NCBI GenBank assembly: GCA_033442325.1
Contig: JAWQFM010000004.1
Coordinates: forward strand, 67,629-108,996
Origin: Salpingoeca rosetta
Lineage: Eukaryota > Protista > Choanoflagellata
Reading direction: 5' to 3'
DNA length: 41,368 nucleotides
Below are positions 2,374-21,189 of the stretch, one piece after another. The notes beneath the pieces were generated by a model that ran no database searches, was not told the DNA's origin, and was given only the letters and a program-made list of their open reading frames with translations. Numbering within the stretch: the first letter of the stretch is position 1; each line of letters starts with the position of its first letter. Made by a program: the position numbers and the translations under genes.

Positions 2374-5300
2374 ATGTCCGGCGGAGAGAAGAGAGCAAGG
2401 GAGGAGGTGGAGGCGTTGCTGGCGCAGACGAAGGTGAAGGATGGGGTGAAGAACAAGATCAGGGCCATCGCCAACAACACGTGTCCGGGGGGAATAGAGT
2501 GAGTGCAAAAGCAACCAAAACGACGTGTTGCAACATGCATGCATGTGTTGGACACTAGGCCACAAGGACACTTCTTGTGGTTGTACTCGTGCTTATTCTC
2601 CCCCTCCCTCTCTGCTTGGCTTGTCCTTGTGTTGCAATGGGTGTGGTGTGGCTTGCTGTTGGGTGTTCACGTGTGCGTGTCCTGTCCCCTCGCACCGCCT
2701 GGACACATCAACAGAGAGAGAGTGTGTGTGTGTGTGTTTGTGGCAGGTTGTGACTGACACCCTCATGTTTTTGCTGTCTCGATCCTCAGTCTTCTTGCTC
2801 ATTTCATGACACACACCATTTGAAATTACAGCTTGGGTGGTTATGGCCTCGGCGACATTGGGGCGCGTGCGGTGGCCGAGGCGCTCAAGGACAACACCTG
2901 CCTCGAAACGCTCGAGTGCGTGGTGATGATGAATCTGCATCGTGTGATATGCATGGTTGATTGGGGTGGCGGTGTTGCACGTTGCATCCCTTTCTCCTCC
3001 CCTGCTTGCGCATGTTTGGACGTGTGTTCACCTTCGCTCCCTGCGGTTCTTGTGTGCCTGCACAGCCTGGCAGTCAATTCCATCGGCGATGAGGGCGCTG
3101 TGGCGTTGGCGGAGATGTTGAAGCACAACACGACCCTCAAAATACTCAAGTGAGTGTGTACACGCACACATGCACATGTATGCTGCGTCACTGCCGTTGC
3201 ACCTAACCACGTGCACATGTGTGGTCGATGACTGTGTTGCCACCCACAACAATCATCATCACGCACGCACTCACTCTTCCTCATCCATGTGGCATCATCG
3301 CCCTATGTGGCATCATACCTCTTGACAGCCTGAACAACAATTCCATCGGCGATGAGGGCGCCGTGGCGTTGGCGGAGATGCTGAAGCACAATATGACCAT
3401 GACATGGCTCCGGTGAGTGTGTACACGCACACATGCACATGTATGCTGCGTCACTGCTGCTGCACCTTATCACGTGCACATGTGCACATGTGTGGATTGA
3501 TGACTGTGTTGCCACCCACAGCAATCATCACTCACTCTTCCTCACCCATGTGGCATCATCGCCCTGTGTGGCATCCACCATACCGTCTTGACAGCCTGGA
3601 ACGCAATTCCATCGGCGATGAGGGCGCCGTGGCGTTGGCGGAGATGCTGGAGCACAACACGACCATGACATTGCTCGCGTGAGTGTGTACACGCACACAC
3701 ACACATGTATGCTGCGTCACTGCCGTTGCACCTTTATCACGTGCACATGTGTGGTTGATGACTGTGTTGACACCTACAACAATCATCATCACTCACTCAC
3801 TCACTCTTTCTCATCCATGTGGCAACATCGCCCTGCGTGGCATCATACCGTCTTGGCAGCCTGAGTGAGAACTCCATCGGCCCTGAGGGCGCCGTGGCGT
3901 TGGCGGAGATGCTGAAGCACAACACGACCCTCACAGCACTCGAGTGAGTGGAAGCTCCTCTTTGAAATGTGTGTCTTTAGGCGCTTCTTCTGCAATACCC
4001 ATGTGCAGATGGAGGCACTGCAAGCCACGCATGATGTCTGTGCGACTTGCTTGTTTGACCAACAAATGCTTCCATCCTTCATATGTGCCACAAGTGCTGC
4101 CACATCCTGTGCAATTTGCATTTGCCCCCTTTGCTTCCGCCATTGTGACTTCAATGTCGTAGGACCTGATGTGCGAGCGAGTCCGCGTGCACGTGGTCCA
4201 TCTGCAACCCACTTTCATCCGTGACACTGACACGTGTTGCTTGCCCACCCGTTCCCCTGCTCTTCCAACATGCATTTCTTGCCACTTGCAGCTTGGATAA
4301 CAACTCCATCACCCCGGTTGGCGGTGCGGCGCTGGGTGCCGCACTGGACCAGAACCGCACGCTGGAAGAACTCTGGTTTGTCGATTGCGTTGCGCCTGCC
4401 TCATGAACGCCTGTGTCCTGTTGTGGATTTGTGTGACCAATCGCCACTCTTTTGAGTGCACGCCACACTGTGTGTTCCTCTCTGCTTGCTTGCATTTCTC
4501 CACAACCCTAACCACCAACCCTCCTGACTCACGCACCGCACTTGCTGTTTGTTCCCAACCACACGCTACCACCACGTGTCCTCGTTCAGCATCGAGAAGA
4601 ACTCCACCGCCACCGCCCGCGCCTTTGGTGCCGCGCTGCCCGTCGACCGAGAACTCAGCACAGACTGGTCAGTCAACGCGTGCTTCCACTCTAGTCATTT
4701 GCTCCCTGCCATCTCTCGACCCTTCTCCTCACGCACACATGCTGCGTGGTACTTGCGTGCACATTTCACGTGGGATCACAGGTATGATGACGATGGGGGC
4801 CAGGCCGCCTTTAACGAAGCACGCGAGGAGCAGAAGCGGCAGCATGAGCAACTGTTTGCCGCCTGCAGGGATGGCGACACTCCAGCTGTCACGTCCCTCA
4901 TCGAACAGGACAATGCAGATGTCAACCAACAGGACAAGCAGGTGTGTTCATTATGTGTGTGTGTGTGCTGTGCTTGTATGTGAACGGCGCTCGCTCATGG
5001 TTGCACCGGCCGTGCGTTCGTTTCCAACAGATCCTCACCACACGTGCCATGCCCCTTGCTGCCCCCACCCATCCACAGGGCGACACGCCACTGCACGTTG
5101 CCTGCAGGCACAACCAGCCCGCCGTCGTGGAGCTGCTCATGAAGAAAGATGCAGACACTGCCGTCAAGAACAAGAAGGTGTGCTTCGCGTCGTGTGGCTG
5201 TTTCTGAAGACGTGACACAACTGTTTCTTTGCTTTGTGCTGTGTCCTCCCCCTCTCCCTGCTTCCCTCCTTCCTCAACTCATGCGTTTTACCTTTGCAAC

Positions 5301-5975
5301 ACACGCAGGGAGAGAGGCCCTATGATGTGGCACAGGCCAGCGGTCATACTGCCATCACCAGCATCCAAGGGCTGAAGCCAGGCGGCAAGCCTTTGGAGCA
5401 ACCACAACAGCAACAGCAGCCAAAACAAGAGCCACCTGCGCCCACTCCTGCCGCCGGACCGAAGCAAGAAGAACAAACAGCGCAAGACGTGAGTGATTTG
5501 ACAAGTGCTTGCCAGCAACGCACAAGCAAATGCATCACGTCACCCATGCCATTCCTTCATCACGCTCTCCGTGGTCTCGTATCAAGCATAATCATGTTGT
5601 CTCACACAACCATCACCAGCACCACCATCAGCAGCAGCCCGAGCAGGCGCGCAGGAAGCGTCTCCAGCAGCGCATGCGGGAGGTCATAGCACGCTTCAAC
5701 GCGACCATGGCGGGCAGGGCCAAACTCATCTTCATTGGTCAGGGGCGCGCCGGGAAGACCAGCACGTTCCACTCGCTCATGGGTCACATGTTCAACAAGC
5801 ATGAGCACTCCACCCTTGGCGCCGCCTCAACCGACCTCGCCGTCATTGTCGAATCAATGGACGTTCACGACTGGCAGGTGTGTACCCTTGTCTGGTGCGA
5901 GCATGTGATGTGTGCGACGCATGGGTGTGAAGAGAGGTGGTGGTTGACACGATCATCCCCTCGCACAAGCGTTCA

Positions 5976-6042
<67 letters not shown>

Positions 6043-9000
6043 CCTTTGCAGGAGCTGGATGCGGAAATCTCGGAGCTGATGCGCAGTCTCTGCGGAACGG
6101 CGCTGGCGCAGGAATCGGGCGTGGATTGGGAGATGAAGCAGGCGATGATGAAGGCGAAGGCCGACTTGGAGAGCCGCGTTGCCCAGCACCAACAGCAACA
6201 GCGGCAGCAGGAAGCCGAGAAGGCAGAGAAAGCAACGGCTGCCAAGCAGAAGCAGAAGCAGTTACAGAATGCAAAGGAGACGCGGCCACGTCCATCCTCC
6301 CGCACGTCGCCAGCGACTGTCCCCAAACCCACCAAGGCATCTCATGACTCAGCATCTGCATCCAAGAAGCAGGCCACCCTGAACCCTTCGAGCCAATGTG
6401 ATGCTGCTGCCCGCAATCACAACAACACCGCCACCGCCACGACCGGCATGTCTGCTGAGGACATGGAGAAAGCGATCAAGGAGTTCAACGTGGACGCCGT
6501 CATGGGCGAGGGCAAAGCACGGGTCACGTTCAAGATCTTTGACCTGGGTGGCCAGTCCACCTTCTACATCTTTCACCCTTTCTTCCTCACAGAGTGAGTT
6601 CAAGTTATGTGCGTGCATGCGTGTGTGTCTGTGTGTTTGAGTGTGTGTGTGTGTGTGTGCGTGTGTGTATGTGTCTGTGTGTGCGTGAGTACGGCTGCGT
6701 GCAGTCCCTCCACCACCTCTCCTCCATTCACCTCTCCCTTCATCACCGCACACCCACACCAGGTACGCGGTGTACCTGCTGGTGTTCTCCATGGAGGACC
6801 TGCTTTACCAAGACAAGAGCAAGCGGGCTGAATCGTGGGAGTTTATGGAGCACTGGCTCTCCTCCCTCCACCTCCACGCCAAGGGTGCACCCGTCCTCAT
6901 CGTCGGCACCTTCGCTGATGTGGTCAGCAAGCGTAAGCAGCACGAGAACATATCCCGTGACATCCACAGTCGCCTGCGCCACAACCCGGCCTTCCCTTCC
7001 GTCATCCACAACGACAAGCATGGTCTGTGGTTCTGGCCCGTCGACAACACCAAGTCTATCAACGACACCATGATCCAGGACCTGCGCCAGACCATCTCCT
7101 CCACAGCACTGGCGCAGGAGTACGTGAGTCAGGAGGTGGCTGTGCCATACCTCCACCTCTACGACAAGCTCAACGCCATCGCCCGCGACGAGCAACGGCC
7201 GCTGCTCACGTTTGATGAGGTGGTGGCGATTGCGCGCACATGTGGGCTGCGCACACGTGAGGAGACGAGGGCCTGCCTCCAGTTCCTGCACCTGTACTCC
7301 ATGGTGCTGTACTATGACACCGTGCCAGGCATGGAGGACTATGTGATCCTGAGTCCGCAGTGGGCGGTGGACATGATGACGCGCGTCATCCGAAACTTTG
7401 ATCTGCATCACGACGTGCGTGATGGTGAGGCGAGGGCCGTTGGTGCGCAGCTGTGGGACGACCTGGTTGACCGCGGCATCCTGCACCGTCGCCTGCTGGA
7501 TGTGCTGTGGAAGGACTTGGAAGGTGGCACGATTGAGCCCTTCCTCCAACTCATGATGGAGTACGGGTTGTGTGTCGACTACACGGCACCAATGGTGCGG
7601 CTGTTCGGCCCTCAACAGCAACAACAACACCACCAACAACACCAACAGTACCTCGTCCCAGCCATCCTGCCGATGACGCTGGAGGATGAACAGGCGTCGT
7701 CGTCGGTGACTCTGAGCACGGCAGCAGCACAGCAGGCCAATCCATACGCTGGATATGAGGAGAAGACAGCCTACGTCGCCTTCAGCCTGAGGGAGTTCAA
7801 GAGGGGTGTAAGCGCCAAGATTGCAGACACGCAGCAAGCCTCCTTCCTGCCAGAGGGCCTGTTCCCGATGGTTCTGGCACGCGTGATGGCACACATGCAG
7901 CATGGTGCAACGGAACCGCCCATGTTGAGCCGGACAGACGCCGTAATCTTCATGGACGTGGCTGAGATCGAATTACAGCTCGTGCCGGCTGTTGGCGGCA
8001 TCAAGATCAAGGTCATGACTGCACGTCCTCGCACGCTGCTGCACATGCTGTACGACACCATCACAACAGCTGTCACGCAGCGCTACCCCGAGCTCAAGGC
8101 CACGTTGCTGCTGCCATTTAATGACACGAGACTGCTGTTCTTCGAGGATGTGCACACCCACCACACGAACAAGAAACCGCTTCGCGTTGGCCGCTCACAG
8201 CTGCTGTCACCAGGGGATCTGGTCGCCAAATATGGTCCACTCTTGCCAGTTATGGGTCAGCAGGACAAATACGATGCCTTCATCAGCTACAGGTGGGACA
8301 TGTGTGTGTGTGCGTGTGTATGTGTGTGTGTGTGTGTGCATGAATGTATGGCGCGAACTGGGTGTCTTTCCTTCCCTCTCTCTTCCTTTCTTATTTCGAC
8401 ACTGACCACCACGTCACAGGCAACGCGGCAACCGGGGTTTGGTGATGACATTGTACCCAAAGTTGGAGCAGCACGGACTGGTAACCTTTGTGGACGCCAA
8501 CAACTTGGAGACAGGCGTCAACTTCAAGCACGCGTGCATGACAGCCCTGCACAACAGTACTGTCGCCTGTCCCGTCGTTTCCGTGGGTGCCATCCATCAG
8601 ATGCGCTCGCTCGGCCACACTGACACGTGCGATAACGTCTTGTTGGAGTGGATGGCCATGCTGGAGCTGCAGCAGCTTGCTCGCCAGCATCCAGACAAGG
8701 TCCACCTCCGCCGCATCGTTCCGCTCTTCCTCGGCAGTGGCTGGCACGACAGCAGTCACCATGTTATGAGCAGGGCAGAGGTGAGCGAGTACGACTCGTT
8801 TGACCGCCTGAAGCGGCTGGCAACGAAGTTGCCGGACGTTGTGAGCAAGAACACGACGTCAGCGCTGGATCAGTACTTTTCACAGGTGCTGCGATTGCAG
8901 CCACCTCAGCAACACAAGAGCGTGCGGGAGGCGGTGTTGTCGCTGTTTGACATTGACGCCGTGGTTGCGATGGATGCCGGTGTGGACCGCACGTCGCAGC

Positions 9001-9548
9001 TGCGCGACATTGCGGAGAAGATTCGCCAGGTCGTCGTCTCTGCCAGGAGCGAGGAGCAAGCAGCTCAGGGGCCAGCAGCTGCACGTCGTTCCACGCAGGT
9101 ATAGTTTTGTGGCTGTGTGTTCTTGAGTGGTTGTGTGTGTGTGTGTGTGTGTGTGCGTGTGTGTATGCAGGCGCACTCCTTTCTCTCTTCCGCTTGGCAC
9201 GCGTGCTGTGTCTCACTCAGCCCCTCTAACTTGTCTGCCGTGCAGTCATCTTCCTCGACCTCCACCGCTACAACTCCTGTTACACCACCACCTACCACCC
9301 CATCGCCCTCTTCCACCTCGTCGCCGTTTGAGCCCGAGTTACTTGAATGGCTCAAACGCCACTCGCTGCTGCCGCACGTCGAGTCGGCACTGGTGGAGCA
9401 CGGCATCGACTCCCTGGAGGTGCTGGTCGTGTCCATACAAGAGGGTGACCTGACCAAGGAGGTACTCAGGGAAGCCGGTGTGAAAATTGGGCCGGCAATC
9501 AAGCTGATTCGGGAGGCAAAGAAGTGTGACGTGGACAGTTCTTCATAG
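2374..9548 (+). CDS. Roco-family protein, LRR(RI-like)-ankyrin-ROC GTPase-COR-TIR-SAM; 16 exons
   Basis: Exons: 2374-2498, 2832-2915, 3066-3149, 3329-3412, 3595-3678, 3860-3943, 4292-4375, 4590-4667, 4782-4941, 5079-5177, 5309-5488, ~5620-5877, 6052-6593, 6763-8292, 8420-9098, 9246-9548; GT/AG and phase-compatible. Motifs: LRR (NSIGDEGAVALAEMLKHNTTL), ANK (GDTPLHVACRHNQPAVVELLM), P-loop KLIFIGQGRAGKTS, G3 FKIFDLGGQ, G4 VLIVGTFAD, COR (ACLQFLHLYSMVLYY...VILSPQWAVDMMTRVI), TIR (YDAFISYRQ...TFVDANNLETG...DNVLLEW), SAM (LLEWLKRHSL...LVEHGIDSLEVL...LREAGVKIGPAIKL). Confidence 0.92.
3066..3950 (+). repeat. Tandem array of four 84-nt LRR exons with three near-identical intervening introns (period 263-266 bp)
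   Basis: Exon starts at 3066, 3329, 3595, 3860. The three introns all begin gtgagtgtgtacacgcacaca...catgtatgctgcgtcactgc and end ...tggcatc...atacc(g)tcttg(a/g)cag. Confidence 0.95.
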
Positions 9549-10070: not shown

Positions 10071-12281
10071 TTAGAAGCGGTTCACGAGCGAGACATCAGG
10101 CCACCGCCAATGGTAGTTTGTTGAGTAGCAGTTGCGCAGCACAACGCAGCCAATGTCTGACAGCCCGTGCATGTTGTCAAAGGCGCAACTCTGCAGAACA
10201 AGCCGCTGAATGCCTTGGAAGCAATCAAATTCCAAGATGGCACACTTGTGAAGGTGGCAATTGAATACTTCTCGACAGCCTGTGATTGACAAGCTGCCAG
10301 GACCATCCGACACAACATTGGAGGGGGCAATAATGGGCACATGCTGAGCAGGAGCGGCCCTCACAGTCAATTCGTCAAGCAAAAGCGTGCCAATGGAGGT
10401 GAAGCCAACACGCCCACAACAACTGTGTAGCGAGGCCCTGTGGCAGCGCGCAATGTCTTGATCGAGCGTGCAGGACGTGAGGCGAAGGTATTGTCGGTCA
10501 GAAAGCAGGTGGATGCCGTGCATTGGGTACTGGAATCGCCCGTGGAGAGTCAACGACTGCACCGCCGGCCCAATCCACTCGCAGTGAAGCTCGCCTTTGA
10601 CAAGGCCATGCAGCTCTTTCACACAGGGCGGCACCGGCCCATCCACGTTGACGCCATCGACACAAACGTGCACGTGGTCAGGGATACCATTCAGGGCACT
10701 GACATTCCTCACACAGTCCTTGAGCACGAGCTTGTCGGTGCGCCGGCCGAGGTCCACAAGAAACTCGCGTGACAACACTCTTCGAAACAACTTGAGTGCC
10801 AGTACATTCGCGTGCACAAAGTCGGGCAGCTGCGGCATCGTGAAGGGTGTTTCATCGGCAATCACAATTCTGTCAACGCGAGTGGGGCAAGTGAACGTCT
10901 TCACTTTGGATCGCAGTCGCAACTCAATGTGGGTAGCGTTGGGCAAATGCAACAGTCTTGGCACTTCCAGCATGTGTGAGAGCGTAATACGGGTGCCATC
11001 GAGTTTGTCATTCTGCAACTGCACCTGACGGAGGCTGAGGTGTTGTGCTGCGGTCACCACCGCATCATCGCCGCTCAGGTGTGCGCCAACAATGTCGAGC
11101 TTTTCCACCCCGAGCAGCGGCGACAGGTCCAACGAGCGGCCGTACAAGCGAGCAAGCCTGATTTCCGGAATGCCCGCGTTCAACATGCCCAAGTCGGAGA
11201 TGGAGGTGCTGTCGCTCAGTTCAAACCGCTGCATGTGTTGAATATCGCCACGAAGGGTCCGCTGATTTCGAGCACACCACGTGACACGTTTCACGTCATG
11301 GATTGTAACGTGGCCAATCTCAGTGGATTGGATGTCAAGGAAATCGATGTGACACGCGCTGAGCGACTCCAACGGACTTTGAATGACCAGGTTCACGTCA
11401 ACGCCGCGTGAGTTGGCGAGCAGCGACGTGCGGAGCTCATGCCACCGATCAGCATCACCCTGGCACATGAATTCAGCCGTGAGCGAAAACAGTGCTGGGG
11501 CGAACGCAGCGGTGACTGTGACCCTGTCACCAACGTGCTGTTGCTGCTTCTGAGAGTGCTGTGGTTGGGCGCTTCGGGTGCTTGTCCCTCCTGCATCTGT
11601 GGACGTGCTGGTGCCTCCTTCTTGCTTGCGTGCATCTGCACCGTGCACACTGCTGTCGTGCTCACTGGCGTCGAGTGCCTGATTCACGTCTGCGGCCCAC
11701 GACTCGACGTCTTCAAGGGACGTGTACGTCACGTGTCCAGAGCGTGCGAACCGATGCCAGAAGCTCTGCGTCTGTGGAGGAGACTGGAGCCTGGAGCGGA
11801 GAAAGGTGCACGTGCTTTTCCACGCCACACCCAGCCAACAATACGCGAGGAAGCGGTTCTCCAACCACACGACGACATGCGCAGTGTCGTCTTCTTGTAA
11901 AGGGAGCGCGGTGGTTTGCATGGCCATCGCGAGGGCCATCATTGCCGAGGTGGTCGCTGCGTGGGCGGGCACAAGAAGGTCCCGTTGAAACACGTCAACC
12001 CAGTGCTCAGTCGTTCGGCTCTGGCGATTCCACACGTTTGTGCTCTTTGTGAACACGGTGGACAGGCACCACTTGGGCATGGCCCACGGCAGGTCATGGT
12101 ACAGCTCGCGGCAAGTCAACATGAGGTTGAAGTACGCGCGCGCCACGTCCCGAGGAGGGCACTCCTGGGGCTTGCTGTCCAGCTGTCCCCCGAACACCCC
12201 GGTGCCCTTGTTCTTTGCTGCCTGCTCTGCTTCCAACACCAACGTCTCCGCCACCAGCGCCCACGCTGCGCCGTCGTTCAT
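10071..12281 (-). CDS. Intronless 736-aa hypothetical protein with degenerate C-terminal leucine-rich repeats
   Basis: 2.2-kb uninterrupted ATG-to-stop ORF free of microsatellites. The C-terminal ~400 aa has LRR-like periodicity (MQRFELSDSTSISDLGML, LDLSPLLGVEKLDIVG, TDKLVLKDCVRNVSALNGI, IQRLVLQSCAFDNMHGLSDIGCVVLRNC). Confidence 0.8.
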   Translation of the reverse strand: MNDGAAWALVAETLVLEAEQAAKNKGTGVFGGQLDSKPQECPPRDVARAYFNLMLTCRELYHDLPWAMPKWCLSTVFTKSTNVWNRQSRTTEHWVDVFQRDLLVPAHAATTSAMMALAMAMQTTALPLQEDDTAHVVVWLENRFLAYCWLGVAWKSTCTFLRSRLQSPPQTQSFWHRFARSGHVTYTSLEDVESWAADVNQALDASEHDSSVHGADARKQEGGTSTSTDAGGTSTRSAQPQHSQKQQQHVGDRVTVTAAFAPALFSLTAEFMCQGDADRWHELRTSLLANSRGVDVNLVIQSPLESLSACHIDFLDIQSTEIGHVTIHDVKRVTWCARNQRTLRGDIQHMQRFELSDSTSISDLGMLNAGIPEIRLARLYGRSLDLSPLLGVEKLDIVGAHLSGDDAVVTAAQHLSLRQVQLQNDKLDGTRITLSHMLEVPRLLHLPNATHIELRLRSKVKTFTCPTRVDRIVIADETPFTMPQLPDFVHANVLALKLFRRVLSREFLVDLGRRTDKLVLKDCVRNVSALNGIPDHVHVCVDGVNVDGPVPPCVKELHGLVKGELHCEWIGPAVQSLTLHGRFQYPMHGIHLLSDRQYLRLTSCTLDQDIARCHRASLHSCCGRVGFTSIGTLLLDELTVRAAPAQHVPIIAPSNVVSDGPGSLSITGCREVFNCHLHKCAILEFDCFQGIQRLVLQSCAFDNMHGLSDIGCVVLRNCYSTNYHWRWPDVSLVNRF

Positions 12282-20362: not shown

Positions 20363-21189
20363 NNNNNNNNNNNNNNNNNNNNNNNNNNNNNNNNNNNNNN
20401 NNNNNNNNNNNNNNNNNNNNNNNNNNNNNNNNNNNNNNNNNNNNNNNNNNNNNNNNNNNNNNNNNNNNNNNNNNNNNNNNNNNNNNNNNNNNNNNNNNNN
20501 NNNNNNNNNNNNNNNNNNNNNNNNNNNNNNNNNNNNNNNNNNNNNNNNNNNNNNNNNNNNNNNNNNNNNNNNNNNNNNNNNNNNNNNNNNNNNNNNNNNN
20601 NNNNNNNNNNNNNNNNNNNNNNNNNNNNNNNNNNNNNNNNNNNNNNNNNNNNNNNNNNNNNNNNNNNNNNNNNNNNNNNNNNNNNNNNNNNNNNNNNNNN
20701 NNNNNNNNNNNNNNNNNNNNNNNNNNNNNNNNNNNNNNNNNNNNNNNNNNNNNNNNNNNNNNNNNNNNNNNNNNNNNNNNNNNNNNNNNNNNNNNNNNNN
20801 NNNNNNNNNNNNNNNNNNNNNNNNNNNNNNNNNNNNNNNNNNNNNNNNNNNNNNNNNNNNNNNNNNNNNNNNNNNNNNNNNNNNNNNNNNNNNNNNNNNN
20901 NNNNNNNNNNNNNNNNNNNNNNNNNNNNNNNNNNNNNNNNNNNNNNNNNNNNNNNNNNNNNNNNNNNNNNNNNNNNNNNNNNNNNNNNNNNNNNNNNNNN
21001 NNNNNNNNNNNNNNNNNNNNNNNNNNNNNNNNNNNNNNNNNNNNNNNNNNNNNNNNNNNNNNNNNNNNNNNNNNNNNNNNNNNNNNNNNNNNNNNNNNNN
21101 NNNNNNNNNNNNNNNNNNNNNNNNNNNNNNNNNNNNNNNNNNNNATCATCATCACCATGATCATCACACCACCACCATCATCATCATCA

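What the first reader, a model, noticed from the sequence alone, without database searches (positions are those of the whole stretch)
8263..8760. TIR domain retains a SARM1-like catalytic glutamate: possible NAD+-cleaving effector
Seen: DKYDAFISYRQRGNRGLVMTLYPKLEQHGLVTFVDANNLETGVNFKHACMTALHNSTVACPVVSVGAIHQMRSLGHTDTCDNVLLEWMAML, with the Glu codon at 8646-8648. Established: SARM1 has DVFISYRR...VFIDVEKLEAG...DCKDWVHKEI, and this Glu is required for NADase activity in SARM1, plant and bacterial TIRs. Inference: activated receptor depletes NAD+ or produces ADPR-isomer signals. The SAM here lies C-terminal to the TIR, the reverse of SARM1.
Basis: partly seen in the sequence, partly recalled or inferred. 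Interest (0 to 1): 0.78.

Follow-up and report, generated by a model that had tools for sequence, protein, structure and literature searches.

The report
Enzyme-type TIR in choanoflagellate Roco gene
This stretch encodes the TIR domain of a Salpingoeca rosetta Roco-family protein and does keep the glutamate needed to process NAD+. An 89%-identical sister copy was already shown in a 2026 preprint to make cyclic ADP-ribose, with activity reported as glutamate-dependent for all active TIRs, so the idea is right but no longer new.

Summary
The quoted peptide is encoded at 8264-8292 and 8420 onward, across a 127-nt GT..AG intron, and GAG at 8646-8648 is the Glu.

The gene is Salpingoeca rosetta PTSG_11207 (XP_004987852.1, UniProt F2USQ8, 1485 aa). 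Its layout is LRR, ANK, Roc, COR, TIR, then a marginal SAM-like tail.

The genome holds at least 43 matches to this TIR type. The CDNVLLEWM motif is invariant in 29 aligned copies despite synonymous codon changes, and dN/dS is about 0.16.

Preprint 10.64898/2026.04.20.719644 (Table S4, row 33) expressed the TIR of paralogue PTSG_12359 (F2UB80), which is 88.7% identical. It placed the catalytic residue at 1118, the same Glu, by structural alignment and detected canonical cADPR. It says point mutants abolished production in all cases. It records no NAD+ depletion and no 2'/3' isomers for this TIR.

My structural test was only partial. The fold matches TIRs (Z 6-7.3), with the Glu in the first turn of helix alphaC.

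This is not a SARM1 orthologue. The scan had already noted sister Roco-TIR genes elsewhere in this genome.

Verdict: real and correctly read, but already known.

The parts
2374..9548 (+). Whole gene PTSG_11207 (P0012, 1485 aa): LRR_6 repeats, ANK, Roc GTPase, COR-A/COR-B, TIR, SAM-like tail
   Evidence: tblastn of P0012 onto the window gives exons at 100% identity (one at 97.6%, one at 99.8%). Pfam scan of P0012. Accessions.
6758..8292 (+). Exon encoding the end of Roc, COR-A, COR-B and the first TIR strand (residues about 650-1158, plus 2 bases of codon R1159)
   Evidence: COR-A 66.9 bits and COR-B 23.5 bits. Exact substring of P0012.
8264..8292 (+). TIR strand betaA, DKYDAFISY(R), at the end of the exon
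   Evidence: Translation. Aligns with SARM1 DVFISYR in PDB alignments made with paralogue P0019.
8293..8419 (+). Intron of 127 nt, GT..AG, with a (GT)n microsatellite, splitting the TIR after ISYR. The position is conserved in 29 of the 30 paralogue loci read; L017 starts mid-exon.
   Evidence: Sequence. Paralogue loci.
8420..8960 (+). TIR exon 2: helix alphaA to alphaE plus a family-specific C-terminal helical extension (residues 1159-1339)
   Evidence: TIR_2 match. AlphaFold model pLDDT 69.6, pTM 0.71. The top 11 of 48,161 PDB representatives are TIR domains.
8646..8648 (+). GAG = Glu1235 in the DNVLLEW motif, the predicted catalytic glutamate in the first turn of helix alphaC
   Evidence: Sequence. 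Helix 72-89 with Glu at model residue 76. Same residue as F2UB80 E1118, named catalytic in Table S4. Codon GAG in 29/29 copies.
8961..9098 (+). Linker after the TIR, partly inside the construct tested in the paralogue
   Evidence: Translation. The tested construct covers paralogue residues 1034-1255.
9099..9245 (+). Intron of 147 nt, GT..AG, phase 0, with a (GT)n tract
   Evidence: Sequence. Exon adjacency in P0012.
9246..9548 (+). Last exon: Ser/Thr/Pro-rich linker, SAM-like domain (about 9336-9521) and TAG stop (9546-9548)
   Evidence: SAM_2 E 8.1e-4, 20.0 bits against a 20.5 cut-off. Best PDB hit is the SHIP2 SAM at E 0.44. Family profile finds nothing in PDB. Atlas SAM clusters score only 0.83-0.84.

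Best explanation
The region encodes the effector TIR domain of a kinase-less Roco protein of the choanoflagellate Salpingoeca rosetta (PTSG_11207). The TIR is of the enzymatic kind. Glu1235 (GAG 8646-8648), at the start of helix alphaC, is the catalytic residue that attacks NAD+. The most likely product is canonical cyclic ADP-ribose, acting as a signal rather than causing wholesale NAD+ depletion.

Shown or documented:
- The gene structure, the TIR fold family and conservation of the Glu are shown here.
- Glu-dependent cADPR production is documented for an 88.7%-identical paralogue.

Inferred only:
- In the full protein the LRR/ANK end senses something.
- The Roc-COR GTPase acts as the switch.
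- TIR self-association, possibly helped by the SAM-like tail, turns the enzyme on.
For: Identity of the gene and domain:
- Exon translations match P0012 exactly.
- Pfam on P0012 gives TIR_2 at 32.9 bits (above the 28 cut-off) plus LRR_6, ANK, Roc and COR-A.
- For the TIR stretch, all 30 nearest Atlas clusters are TIR or TIR_2 clusters.

Fold:
- The exon-2 model places the Glu at residue 76, in the first turn of helix 72-89 that follows strand 48-54.
- VIA-align against 48,161 PDB representatives puts TIR domains in the first 11 places. These include RPS4 (Z 7.3), SARM1 (Z 6.0, rmsd 3.4, 115 aligned) and C. elegans TIR-1 (Z 5.7).
- The SARM1 alignment starts at SARM1 residue 570 against the first exon-2 residue. 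This fits Y568 aligning with Y1158.
- The Tyr-to-Glu spacing is 74 residues in SARM1 and 77 here (counts).

Constraint:
- CDNVLLEWM is invariant in 29 copies, with synonymous variation at 5 of its 9 codons.
- dN/dS is about 0.16 over 110 codons in 16 paralogues, at a mean dS of 0.52.

Experiment in the literature:
- F2UB80 (= P0004 = PTSG_12359), TIR residues 1034-1255, catalytic residue 1118, is listed 'Active yes, cADPR yes'.
- Residue 1118 is the E of DNVLLEW.
- The text states that activity depended on the glutamate in all cases.
- The 25 differences between our TIR and that construct all fall outside the family's invariant columns.
Against: - This copy was never assayed, and 25 of 222 residues differ from the tested construct.
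- I could not superpose the Glu residue by residue. The tools give ranges only, the model lacks strand betaA, and its pLDDT is 69.6.
- Foldseek found no significant PDB match, and the VIA Z scores are below 8.
- Sequence searches of PDB reach TIRs only at E 0.45-1, and only over the N-terminal third.
- The Trp four residues before the Glu in SARM1 (DWVHKE) is Asn here (DNVLLE). The tested paralogue shares this change and is still active.
- The activity was measured on an isolated domain over-expressed in E. coli, in a preprint.
- The Table S4 text held here leaves the ThsE-activation column empty for this TIR, and I found no separate row for its mutant.
- I found no expression evidence for this gene.
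Confidence: 0.85

Rival explanations
1. Scaffold-type TIR. The domain works only as a protein-protein adaptor, as classically assumed for TLR and MyD88 TIRs. The Glu is retained without being used for catalysis.
For: Some TIRs with a Glu at this position (TLR2, IL-1R9, IL-1R10) showed no activity because the Glu points out of the pocket (preprint discussion). An oomycete TIR with a similar DNLLLEY motif is not marked active in Table S4. Adaptor TIRs (IL-18Rbeta, TRIF, TRAM) score almost as well as enzymatic ones in the fold search.
Against: The 88.7%-identical paralogue with the identical motif produces cADPR. The strict invariance of the 9-mer around the Glu under synonymous change goes beyond what an interface alone would predict.
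Confidence: 0.07
2. SARM1-style executioner. On activation the TIR mainly destroys NAD+ and kills or arrests the cell, and cADPR is only a by-product.
For: SARM1 makes cADPR as a major product while depleting NAD+ (Table S4 controls). The related extended TIR of Guillardia theta (motif DHVLMEW) both makes cADPR and depletes NAD+ overnight. Forced oligomerisation in the native protein could raise the rate well above that of an isolated domain.
Against: The NAD+-depletion column is empty for the S. rosetta TIR. The text lists the depleters and does not include it.
Confidence: 0.25
3. This particular copy is a decaying or silent member of a large, fast-turning-over family. On this reading its intact Glu says nothing about its use.
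For: The family contains degenerate copies. Five of the 41 copies that cover the site have Q, K, K, K or M instead of Glu. One copy is frameshifted across the motif. No expression data were obtained here.
Against: The whole 1485-codon frame is open across canonical GT..AG introns and matches the public model. Against its paralogues dN/dS is 0.10-0.21. All family-invariant residues are kept.
Confidence: 0.08

Closest known systems
TIR of Salpingoeca rosetta PTSG_12359 (UniProt F2UB80), tested in bioRxiv 10.64898/2026.04.20.719644
   Same: Same gene family and same layout (LRR-ANK-Roc-COR-TIR-SAM-like). It is 88.7% identical over the tested 222 residues and has the identical DTCDNVLLEWM motif. 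Its catalytic residue 1118 corresponds to Glu1235 here.
   Different: It is a different locus (contig C13 in this assembly). There are 25 substitutions, all at family-variable positions. Our copy is untested.
SARM1 / dSarm / TIR-1 (animal NAD+ hydrolase)
   Same: Shared motifs: FISYR at betaA, F[IV]D..xLExG at betaB, D.V..E with the catalytic Glu, and IVP at betaD. Fold match Z 6.0 (5.7 to TIR-1). Both make cADPR.
   Different: There is no ARM autoinhibitory domain, and Roc-COR stands in its place. There is one marginal SAM-like domain after the TIR instead of two SAMs before it. Asn replaces Trp at position -4. PDB sequence matches are not significant (E 0.5-1). No NAD+ depletion is recorded for the paralogue. 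A separate preprint places true SARM1-like sequences of choanoflagellates in a bacterial-derived clade. I did not test where this TIR falls.
Plant TIR-NLR and TIR-only immune proteins (RPS4, RPP1, L6, AtTIR, BdTIR) and bacterial Thoeris ThsB TIRs
   Same: An enzymatic TIR with a Glu on alphaC, fused to or working with a sensor and a nucleotide switch. RPS4 is the best fold match (Z 7.3). AtTIR is the best PDB sequence hit. Type VII Thoeris also signals with canonical cADPR.
   Different: The switch is a Roc-COR GTPase, not an NB-ARC/STAND ATPase. The TIR is C-terminal. The recorded product is canonical cADPR, not 2'/3'cADPR.
Roco proteins (LRRK2, DAPK1, MFHAS1, bacterial and Dictyostelium Rocos)
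   Same: LRR-ANK-Roc-COR core: Roc 60.7 bits, COR-A 64.1 bits, weak ANK_LRRK2.
   Different: No kinase or death domain was found, although UniRef names the protein 'non-specific serine/threonine protein kinase'. The output domain is a TIR enzyme.
Guillardia theta L1IYH1 TIR (same preprint)
   Same: An extended TIR of about 225 residues with a D[NH]VL[LM]EW motif and an LPD[VI]V segment after betaD. It produces cADPR.
   Different: It comes from a cryptophyte, depletes NAD+ overnight, and its relationship to this TIR was not measured here.

Membership tests
TIR domain superfamily | Sequence match to the TIR profiles above the curated threshold | tested here: met
   On P0012, TIR_2 scores 32.9 bits against a 28 cut-off (E 1e-7). 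Exon 2 alone falls just below at 25.8 bits. All 24 sequences scanned, 23 of them family proteins, match.
TIR domain superfamily | Flavodoxin-like alpha/beta TIR fold | tested here: met
   The exon-2 model (pLDDT 69.6, pTM 0.71, no betaA) has TIR domains as its 11 best matches among 48,161 PDB representatives, at Z 5.2-7.3. Foldseek alone found nothing significant.
Catalytic (NAD+-processing) TIRs | Glutamate on helix alphaC at the catalytic position (within 3 A of ThsB E85 / SARM1 E642) | tested here: inconclusive
   Here I show only that the Glu lies in the first turn of alphaC, and that spacing and alignment ranges fit SARM1 E642. Residue-level superposition was not available to me. The preprint did it for the family and names the identical residue in F2UB80.
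Catalytic (NAD+-processing) TIRs | Glu-dependent NAD+ turnover or cADPR-isomer production | not testable with these tools
   Documented for the 88.7%-identical paralogue: active, producing cADPR (Table S4). Not measured for this copy.
Catalytic (NAD+-processing) TIRs | Self-association that forms the composite active site (BB-loop contacts) | not tested
   No multimer modelling was possible. The SAM-like tail and COR dimerisation are only inferred helpers.
SARM1 orthologues | ARM - SAM - SAM - TIR architecture | tested here: not met
   Pfam finds LRR_6, ANK, Roc, COR and TIR_2 and no ARM. The single SAM-like segment follows the TIR.
SARM1 orthologues | TIR closer to SARM1 than to other TIR classes | tested here: not met
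   SARM1 scores Z 6.0, against RPS4 at 7.3 and Cat1 at 7.2. By PDB sequence search SARM1 (E 0.5-1) is tied with AtTIR (0.45).
Roco proteins | Roc GTPase immediately followed by a COR domain | tested here: met
   Roc 60.7 bits, COR-A 64.1 bits, COR-B 21.6 bits (below its 27 cut-off). The motifs GQGRAGKT and DLGGQ are visible in P0012.
SAM domain | Match to SAM profiles or structures | tested here: inconclusive
   SAM_2 scores 20.0 against a 20.5 cut-off. Only 4 of 24 family members match at E<=0.01. The SHIP2 SAM hit is at E 0.44. The family profile finds nothing in PDB. Atlas scores are 0.83-0.84.

The most novel reading that the evidence does not exclude
The family of 40 or more Roco-TIR(-SAM-like) genes to which this gene belongs could be a choanoflagellate intracellular immune-receptor repertoire. 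In it a Roc-COR GTPase, rather than a STAND ATPase, would gate a cADPR-producing TIR. The few copies that have lost the glutamate (Q, K or M) would act as non-catalytic partners or decoys. That would be an independent, GTPase-switched counterpart of plant TIR-NLRs in the closest relatives of animals.
Probability: 0.3. Interest if true: 0.75.

Novelty: already known. Interest (0 to 1): 0.3.

Why it matters
The finding places an enzymatic TIR on a GTPase-switched, LRR-bearing protein in the sister group of animals. That bears on whether TIR signalling through NAD+-derived nucleotides predates animals.

The point has now been made experimentally for a sister copy, so this locus adds little on the enzyme itself. 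What it adds is context:
- the exact gene model of a second family member;
- evidence that the catalytic motif is under strong purifying selection across about 40 copies;
- a list of copies that have lost the Glu.

Still open and worth testing are what activates the Roc-COR switch, whether the SAM-like tail drives assembly, and what reads cADPR in a choanoflagellate.

Tried and rejected
- **PDB sequence search with exon 2 alone:** it gave only a Hydra TIR at E 1.
- **29-paralogue profile against PDB:** it reached no TIR. The family profile is too narrow and lacks betaA.
- **PDB search with P0019:** only TIR chains appeared, at E 0.45-1, and the alignments stopped before the Glu. No sequence-level equivalence to SARM1 E642 could be shown.
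- **Foldseek with the exon-2 model:** no significant hit. The L6 TIR came 19th at probability 0.63.
- **Recovering betaA without joining exons:** I folded paralogue L004, whose TIR intron is in frame and free of stops, with the family as alignment. The model was poor (pLDDT 46.1) and I discarded it.
- **Joined TIR not folded:** The complete spliced TIR alone has no reference, and P0012 (1485 aa) exceeds the folding limit.
- **SAM domain:** a family profile against PDB found nothing and the Atlas gave only leads. SAM stays 'SAM-like'.
- **SARM1 sequence not typed in:** I did not enter the SARM1 sequence from the preprint into a script. Motif and spacing comparisons were made by eye.
- **Large representative-protein search not run:** the literature had already settled the question.
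- **Literature searches:** Roco + TIR + choanoflagellate returned nothing.
- **SARM1 orthology:** considered and rejected on architecture.

Full report
**What is in the sequence**

The window is eukaryotic. It has short GT..AG introns rich in (GT)n/(CA)n tracts and many interrupted reading frames.

DKYDAFISYR lies at 8264-8292. A 127-nt intron occupies 8293-8419 and splits codon AG|G (Arg). QRGNRGLVMTLYPK... follows from 8421. The stated Glu codon is correct: GAG at 8646-8648 within GAT AAC GTC TTG TTG GAG TGG (DNVLLEW). A second intron (9099-9245) precedes the last exon (9246-9548, TAG stop), which carries the SAM-like segment.

**Which gene and organism**

The window is contig C4:67629-108996 of a 55.4-Mb assembly. 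A word-based protein search with the TIR region of a paralogue returned 24 proteins, all from Salpingoeca rosetta.

One of them, P0012, is PTSG_11207 (XP_004987852.1, UniProt F2USQ8, 1485 aa). It contains each of my exon translations as exact, adjacent substrings: residues 655-1158, R1159, 1160-1385 and 1386-1485.

Wherever a spliced sequence was needed I used this database record by its id.

Pfam on P0012 gives LRR_6 x5, ANK, Roc, COR-A, weak COR-B, and TIR_2 at 32.9 bits against a cut-off of 28. No kinase domain is found, although UniRef names the protein a 'non-specific serine/threonine protein kinase'.

**The family**

Searching the genome with exon 2 gives 43 matches. In 29 of the 30 loci read, the intron sits at the same place after ISYR; the exception is L017, which starts mid-exon. 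In 29 aligned copies (56-93% identical, mean column identity 70%) the 9-mer CDNVLLEWM is invariant.

This is not just recent copying. Five of the nine codons show synonymous variants, while Glu is GAG in all 29. Over 110 TIR codons in 16 closer paralogues the mean dN is 0.082 and the mean dS 0.516, a ratio of 0.16.

Counting the weaker matches as well, 36 of the 41 copies that cover the site keep Glu. Five have Q, K, K, K or M, and one copy is frameshifted across the motif.

**Is it the catalytic position?**

By sequence alone I could not reach solved TIRs significantly:
- Exon 2 alone hit only a Hydra TIR at E 1.
- The family profile hit no TIR.
- Paralogue P0019 hit only TIR chains (AtTIR, SARM1) at E 0.45-1, and only over betaA to betaB.

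An AlphaFold model of exon 2 (no betaA; pLDDT 69.6, pTM 0.71) shows the expected order of elements. The Glu is at model residue 76, in the first turn of helix 72-89, after strand 48-54.

Foldseek gave nothing significant. An exhaustive VIA-align run against 48,161 PDB representatives did better: the first 11 matches were all TIR domains. They include RPS4 (Z 7.3), Cat1 (7.2), SARM1 (6.0; rmsd 3.4 A over 115 residues) and TIR-1 (5.7).

The SARM1 alignment starts at SARM1 residue 570 opposite the first exon-2 residue. This fits Y568 aligning with Y1158. The Tyr-to-Glu spacing is 74 residues in SARM1 and 77 here.

These Z values are middling and the tools give ranges, not residue pairs. My own structural test is therefore consistent but not decisive.

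A second model tried to include betaA through a paralogue whose intron is in frame. It was poor (pLDDT 46.1) and I discarded it.

**The literature settles most of it**

- It collected about 16,000 eukaryotic TIR domains.
- It called a Glu catalytic when its C-alpha lay within 3 A of ThsB E85 after TM-align.
- It expressed 154 TIRs in E. coli.

Its Table S4, row 33, is F2UB80_1 of S. rosetta: protein length 1352, TIR 1034-1255, catalytic residue 1118, 'Active: yes', 'cADPR: yes'.

F2UB80 is P0004 = PTSG_12359. Its residue 1118 is the E of DNVLLEW, and its tested stretch is 197/222 = 88.7% identical to ours. All 25 differences lie outside the family's invariant columns.

The text names S. rosetta among the non-animal cADPR producers. 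It says that in all cases a point mutation of the glutamate abolished cADPR production. It also says NAD+ was not depleted in most cases, and S. rosetta is not among the listed exceptions.

[quoted passage not shown] The figure legend lists LRR, Roc and COR among the domain abbreviations used for the proteins it shows.

Earlier, Richter et al. 2018 (PMC6040629) had already noted two things: the conserved Glu in choanoflagellate SARM1 homologues, and TIRs joined to ANK, ARM and SH2 domains.

**Mechanism**

Shown or documented: the gene model, the TIR fold family, the Glu on alphaC under strong constraint, and Glu-dependent cADPR synthesis by a near-identical sister domain.

Inferred:
- The LRR/ANK end senses something.
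- Roc-COR (P-loop GQGRAGKT, switch II DLGGQ) switches state.
- TIR self-association completes the active site.
- The SAM-like tail may help assembly.

The SAM call itself is marginal.

**Comparison and novelty**

The domain works like the enzymatic TIRs of SARM1, plant TIR proteins and Thoeris. It is not a SARM1 orthologue:
- It has no ARM domain.
- It has one SAM-like domain, placed after the TIR.
- Asn replaces Trp four residues before the Glu.
- It is no closer to SARM1 than to plant TIRs.

I found no paper that describes the Roco-TIR family of choanoflagellates as such. The specific claim of this finding, however, is already published for a sister copy. That claim is a retained catalytic Glu and a likely NAD+-processing TIR. 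The gene is also in public databases with its TIR annotated.

The scan itself had already noted sister Roco-TIR genes on other pieces of this genome. I therefore rate the finding correct but already known, with modest remaining interest in the family's biology.

Noticed in passing
L017 (G000:C32:30066-30335); L038 (two tandem copies, G000:C25:1025692-1026417); L039 (G000:C31:785083-785298); L037 (G000:C4:1058497-1058859): Five copies of this TIR type have lost the glutamate. One has NVLLQW and is 5'-truncated. Three have DVLLKW together with a 9-residue deletion near strand betaC. One has AVLLMW. They could be decaying copies or non-catalytic partners.
   Followed up: partly
L041 (G000:C30:58867-59361), public model P0024 = PTSG_10524: In this family member the TIR exon is broken into pieces in different frames around the catalytic motif. 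The public protein model reads on in the wrong frame, so the motif is missing from P0024.
   Followed up: partly
L004:1318-2055:- (G000:C23, gene PTSG_11050): In this paralogue the intron inside the TIR is a multiple of three and has no stop codon. Intron retention would insert 38 residues between betaA and alphaA without breaking the frame.
   Followed up: partly
window 20363-21144: An assembly gap (a run of N) flanked by a long (CA)n tract on one side and an (ATC)n tract on the other. It explains the apparent low-GC stretch at 19-22 kb in the composition profile.
   Followed up: yes
window 10071-12281, minus strand: An uninterrupted 736-codon ORF lies convergent with and just downstream of the Roco-TIR gene. 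It has no Pfam family at E<=0.01.
   Followed up: partly
P0012 and 19 of the other family proteins: UniRef names these proteins 'non-specific serine/threonine protein kinase'. No kinase domain is found by Pfam, so the name probably comes from similarity to LRRK-type Roc-COR proteins.
   Followed up: yes
P0018 (PTSG_11903, 1728 aa) and P0021/P0022: Some family members replace the SAM-like tail. P0018 has a long extra C-terminal region after the TIR, and P0021 and P0022 end in a different, Cys-rich tail (...CCALM / CCCLLM).
   Followed up: no
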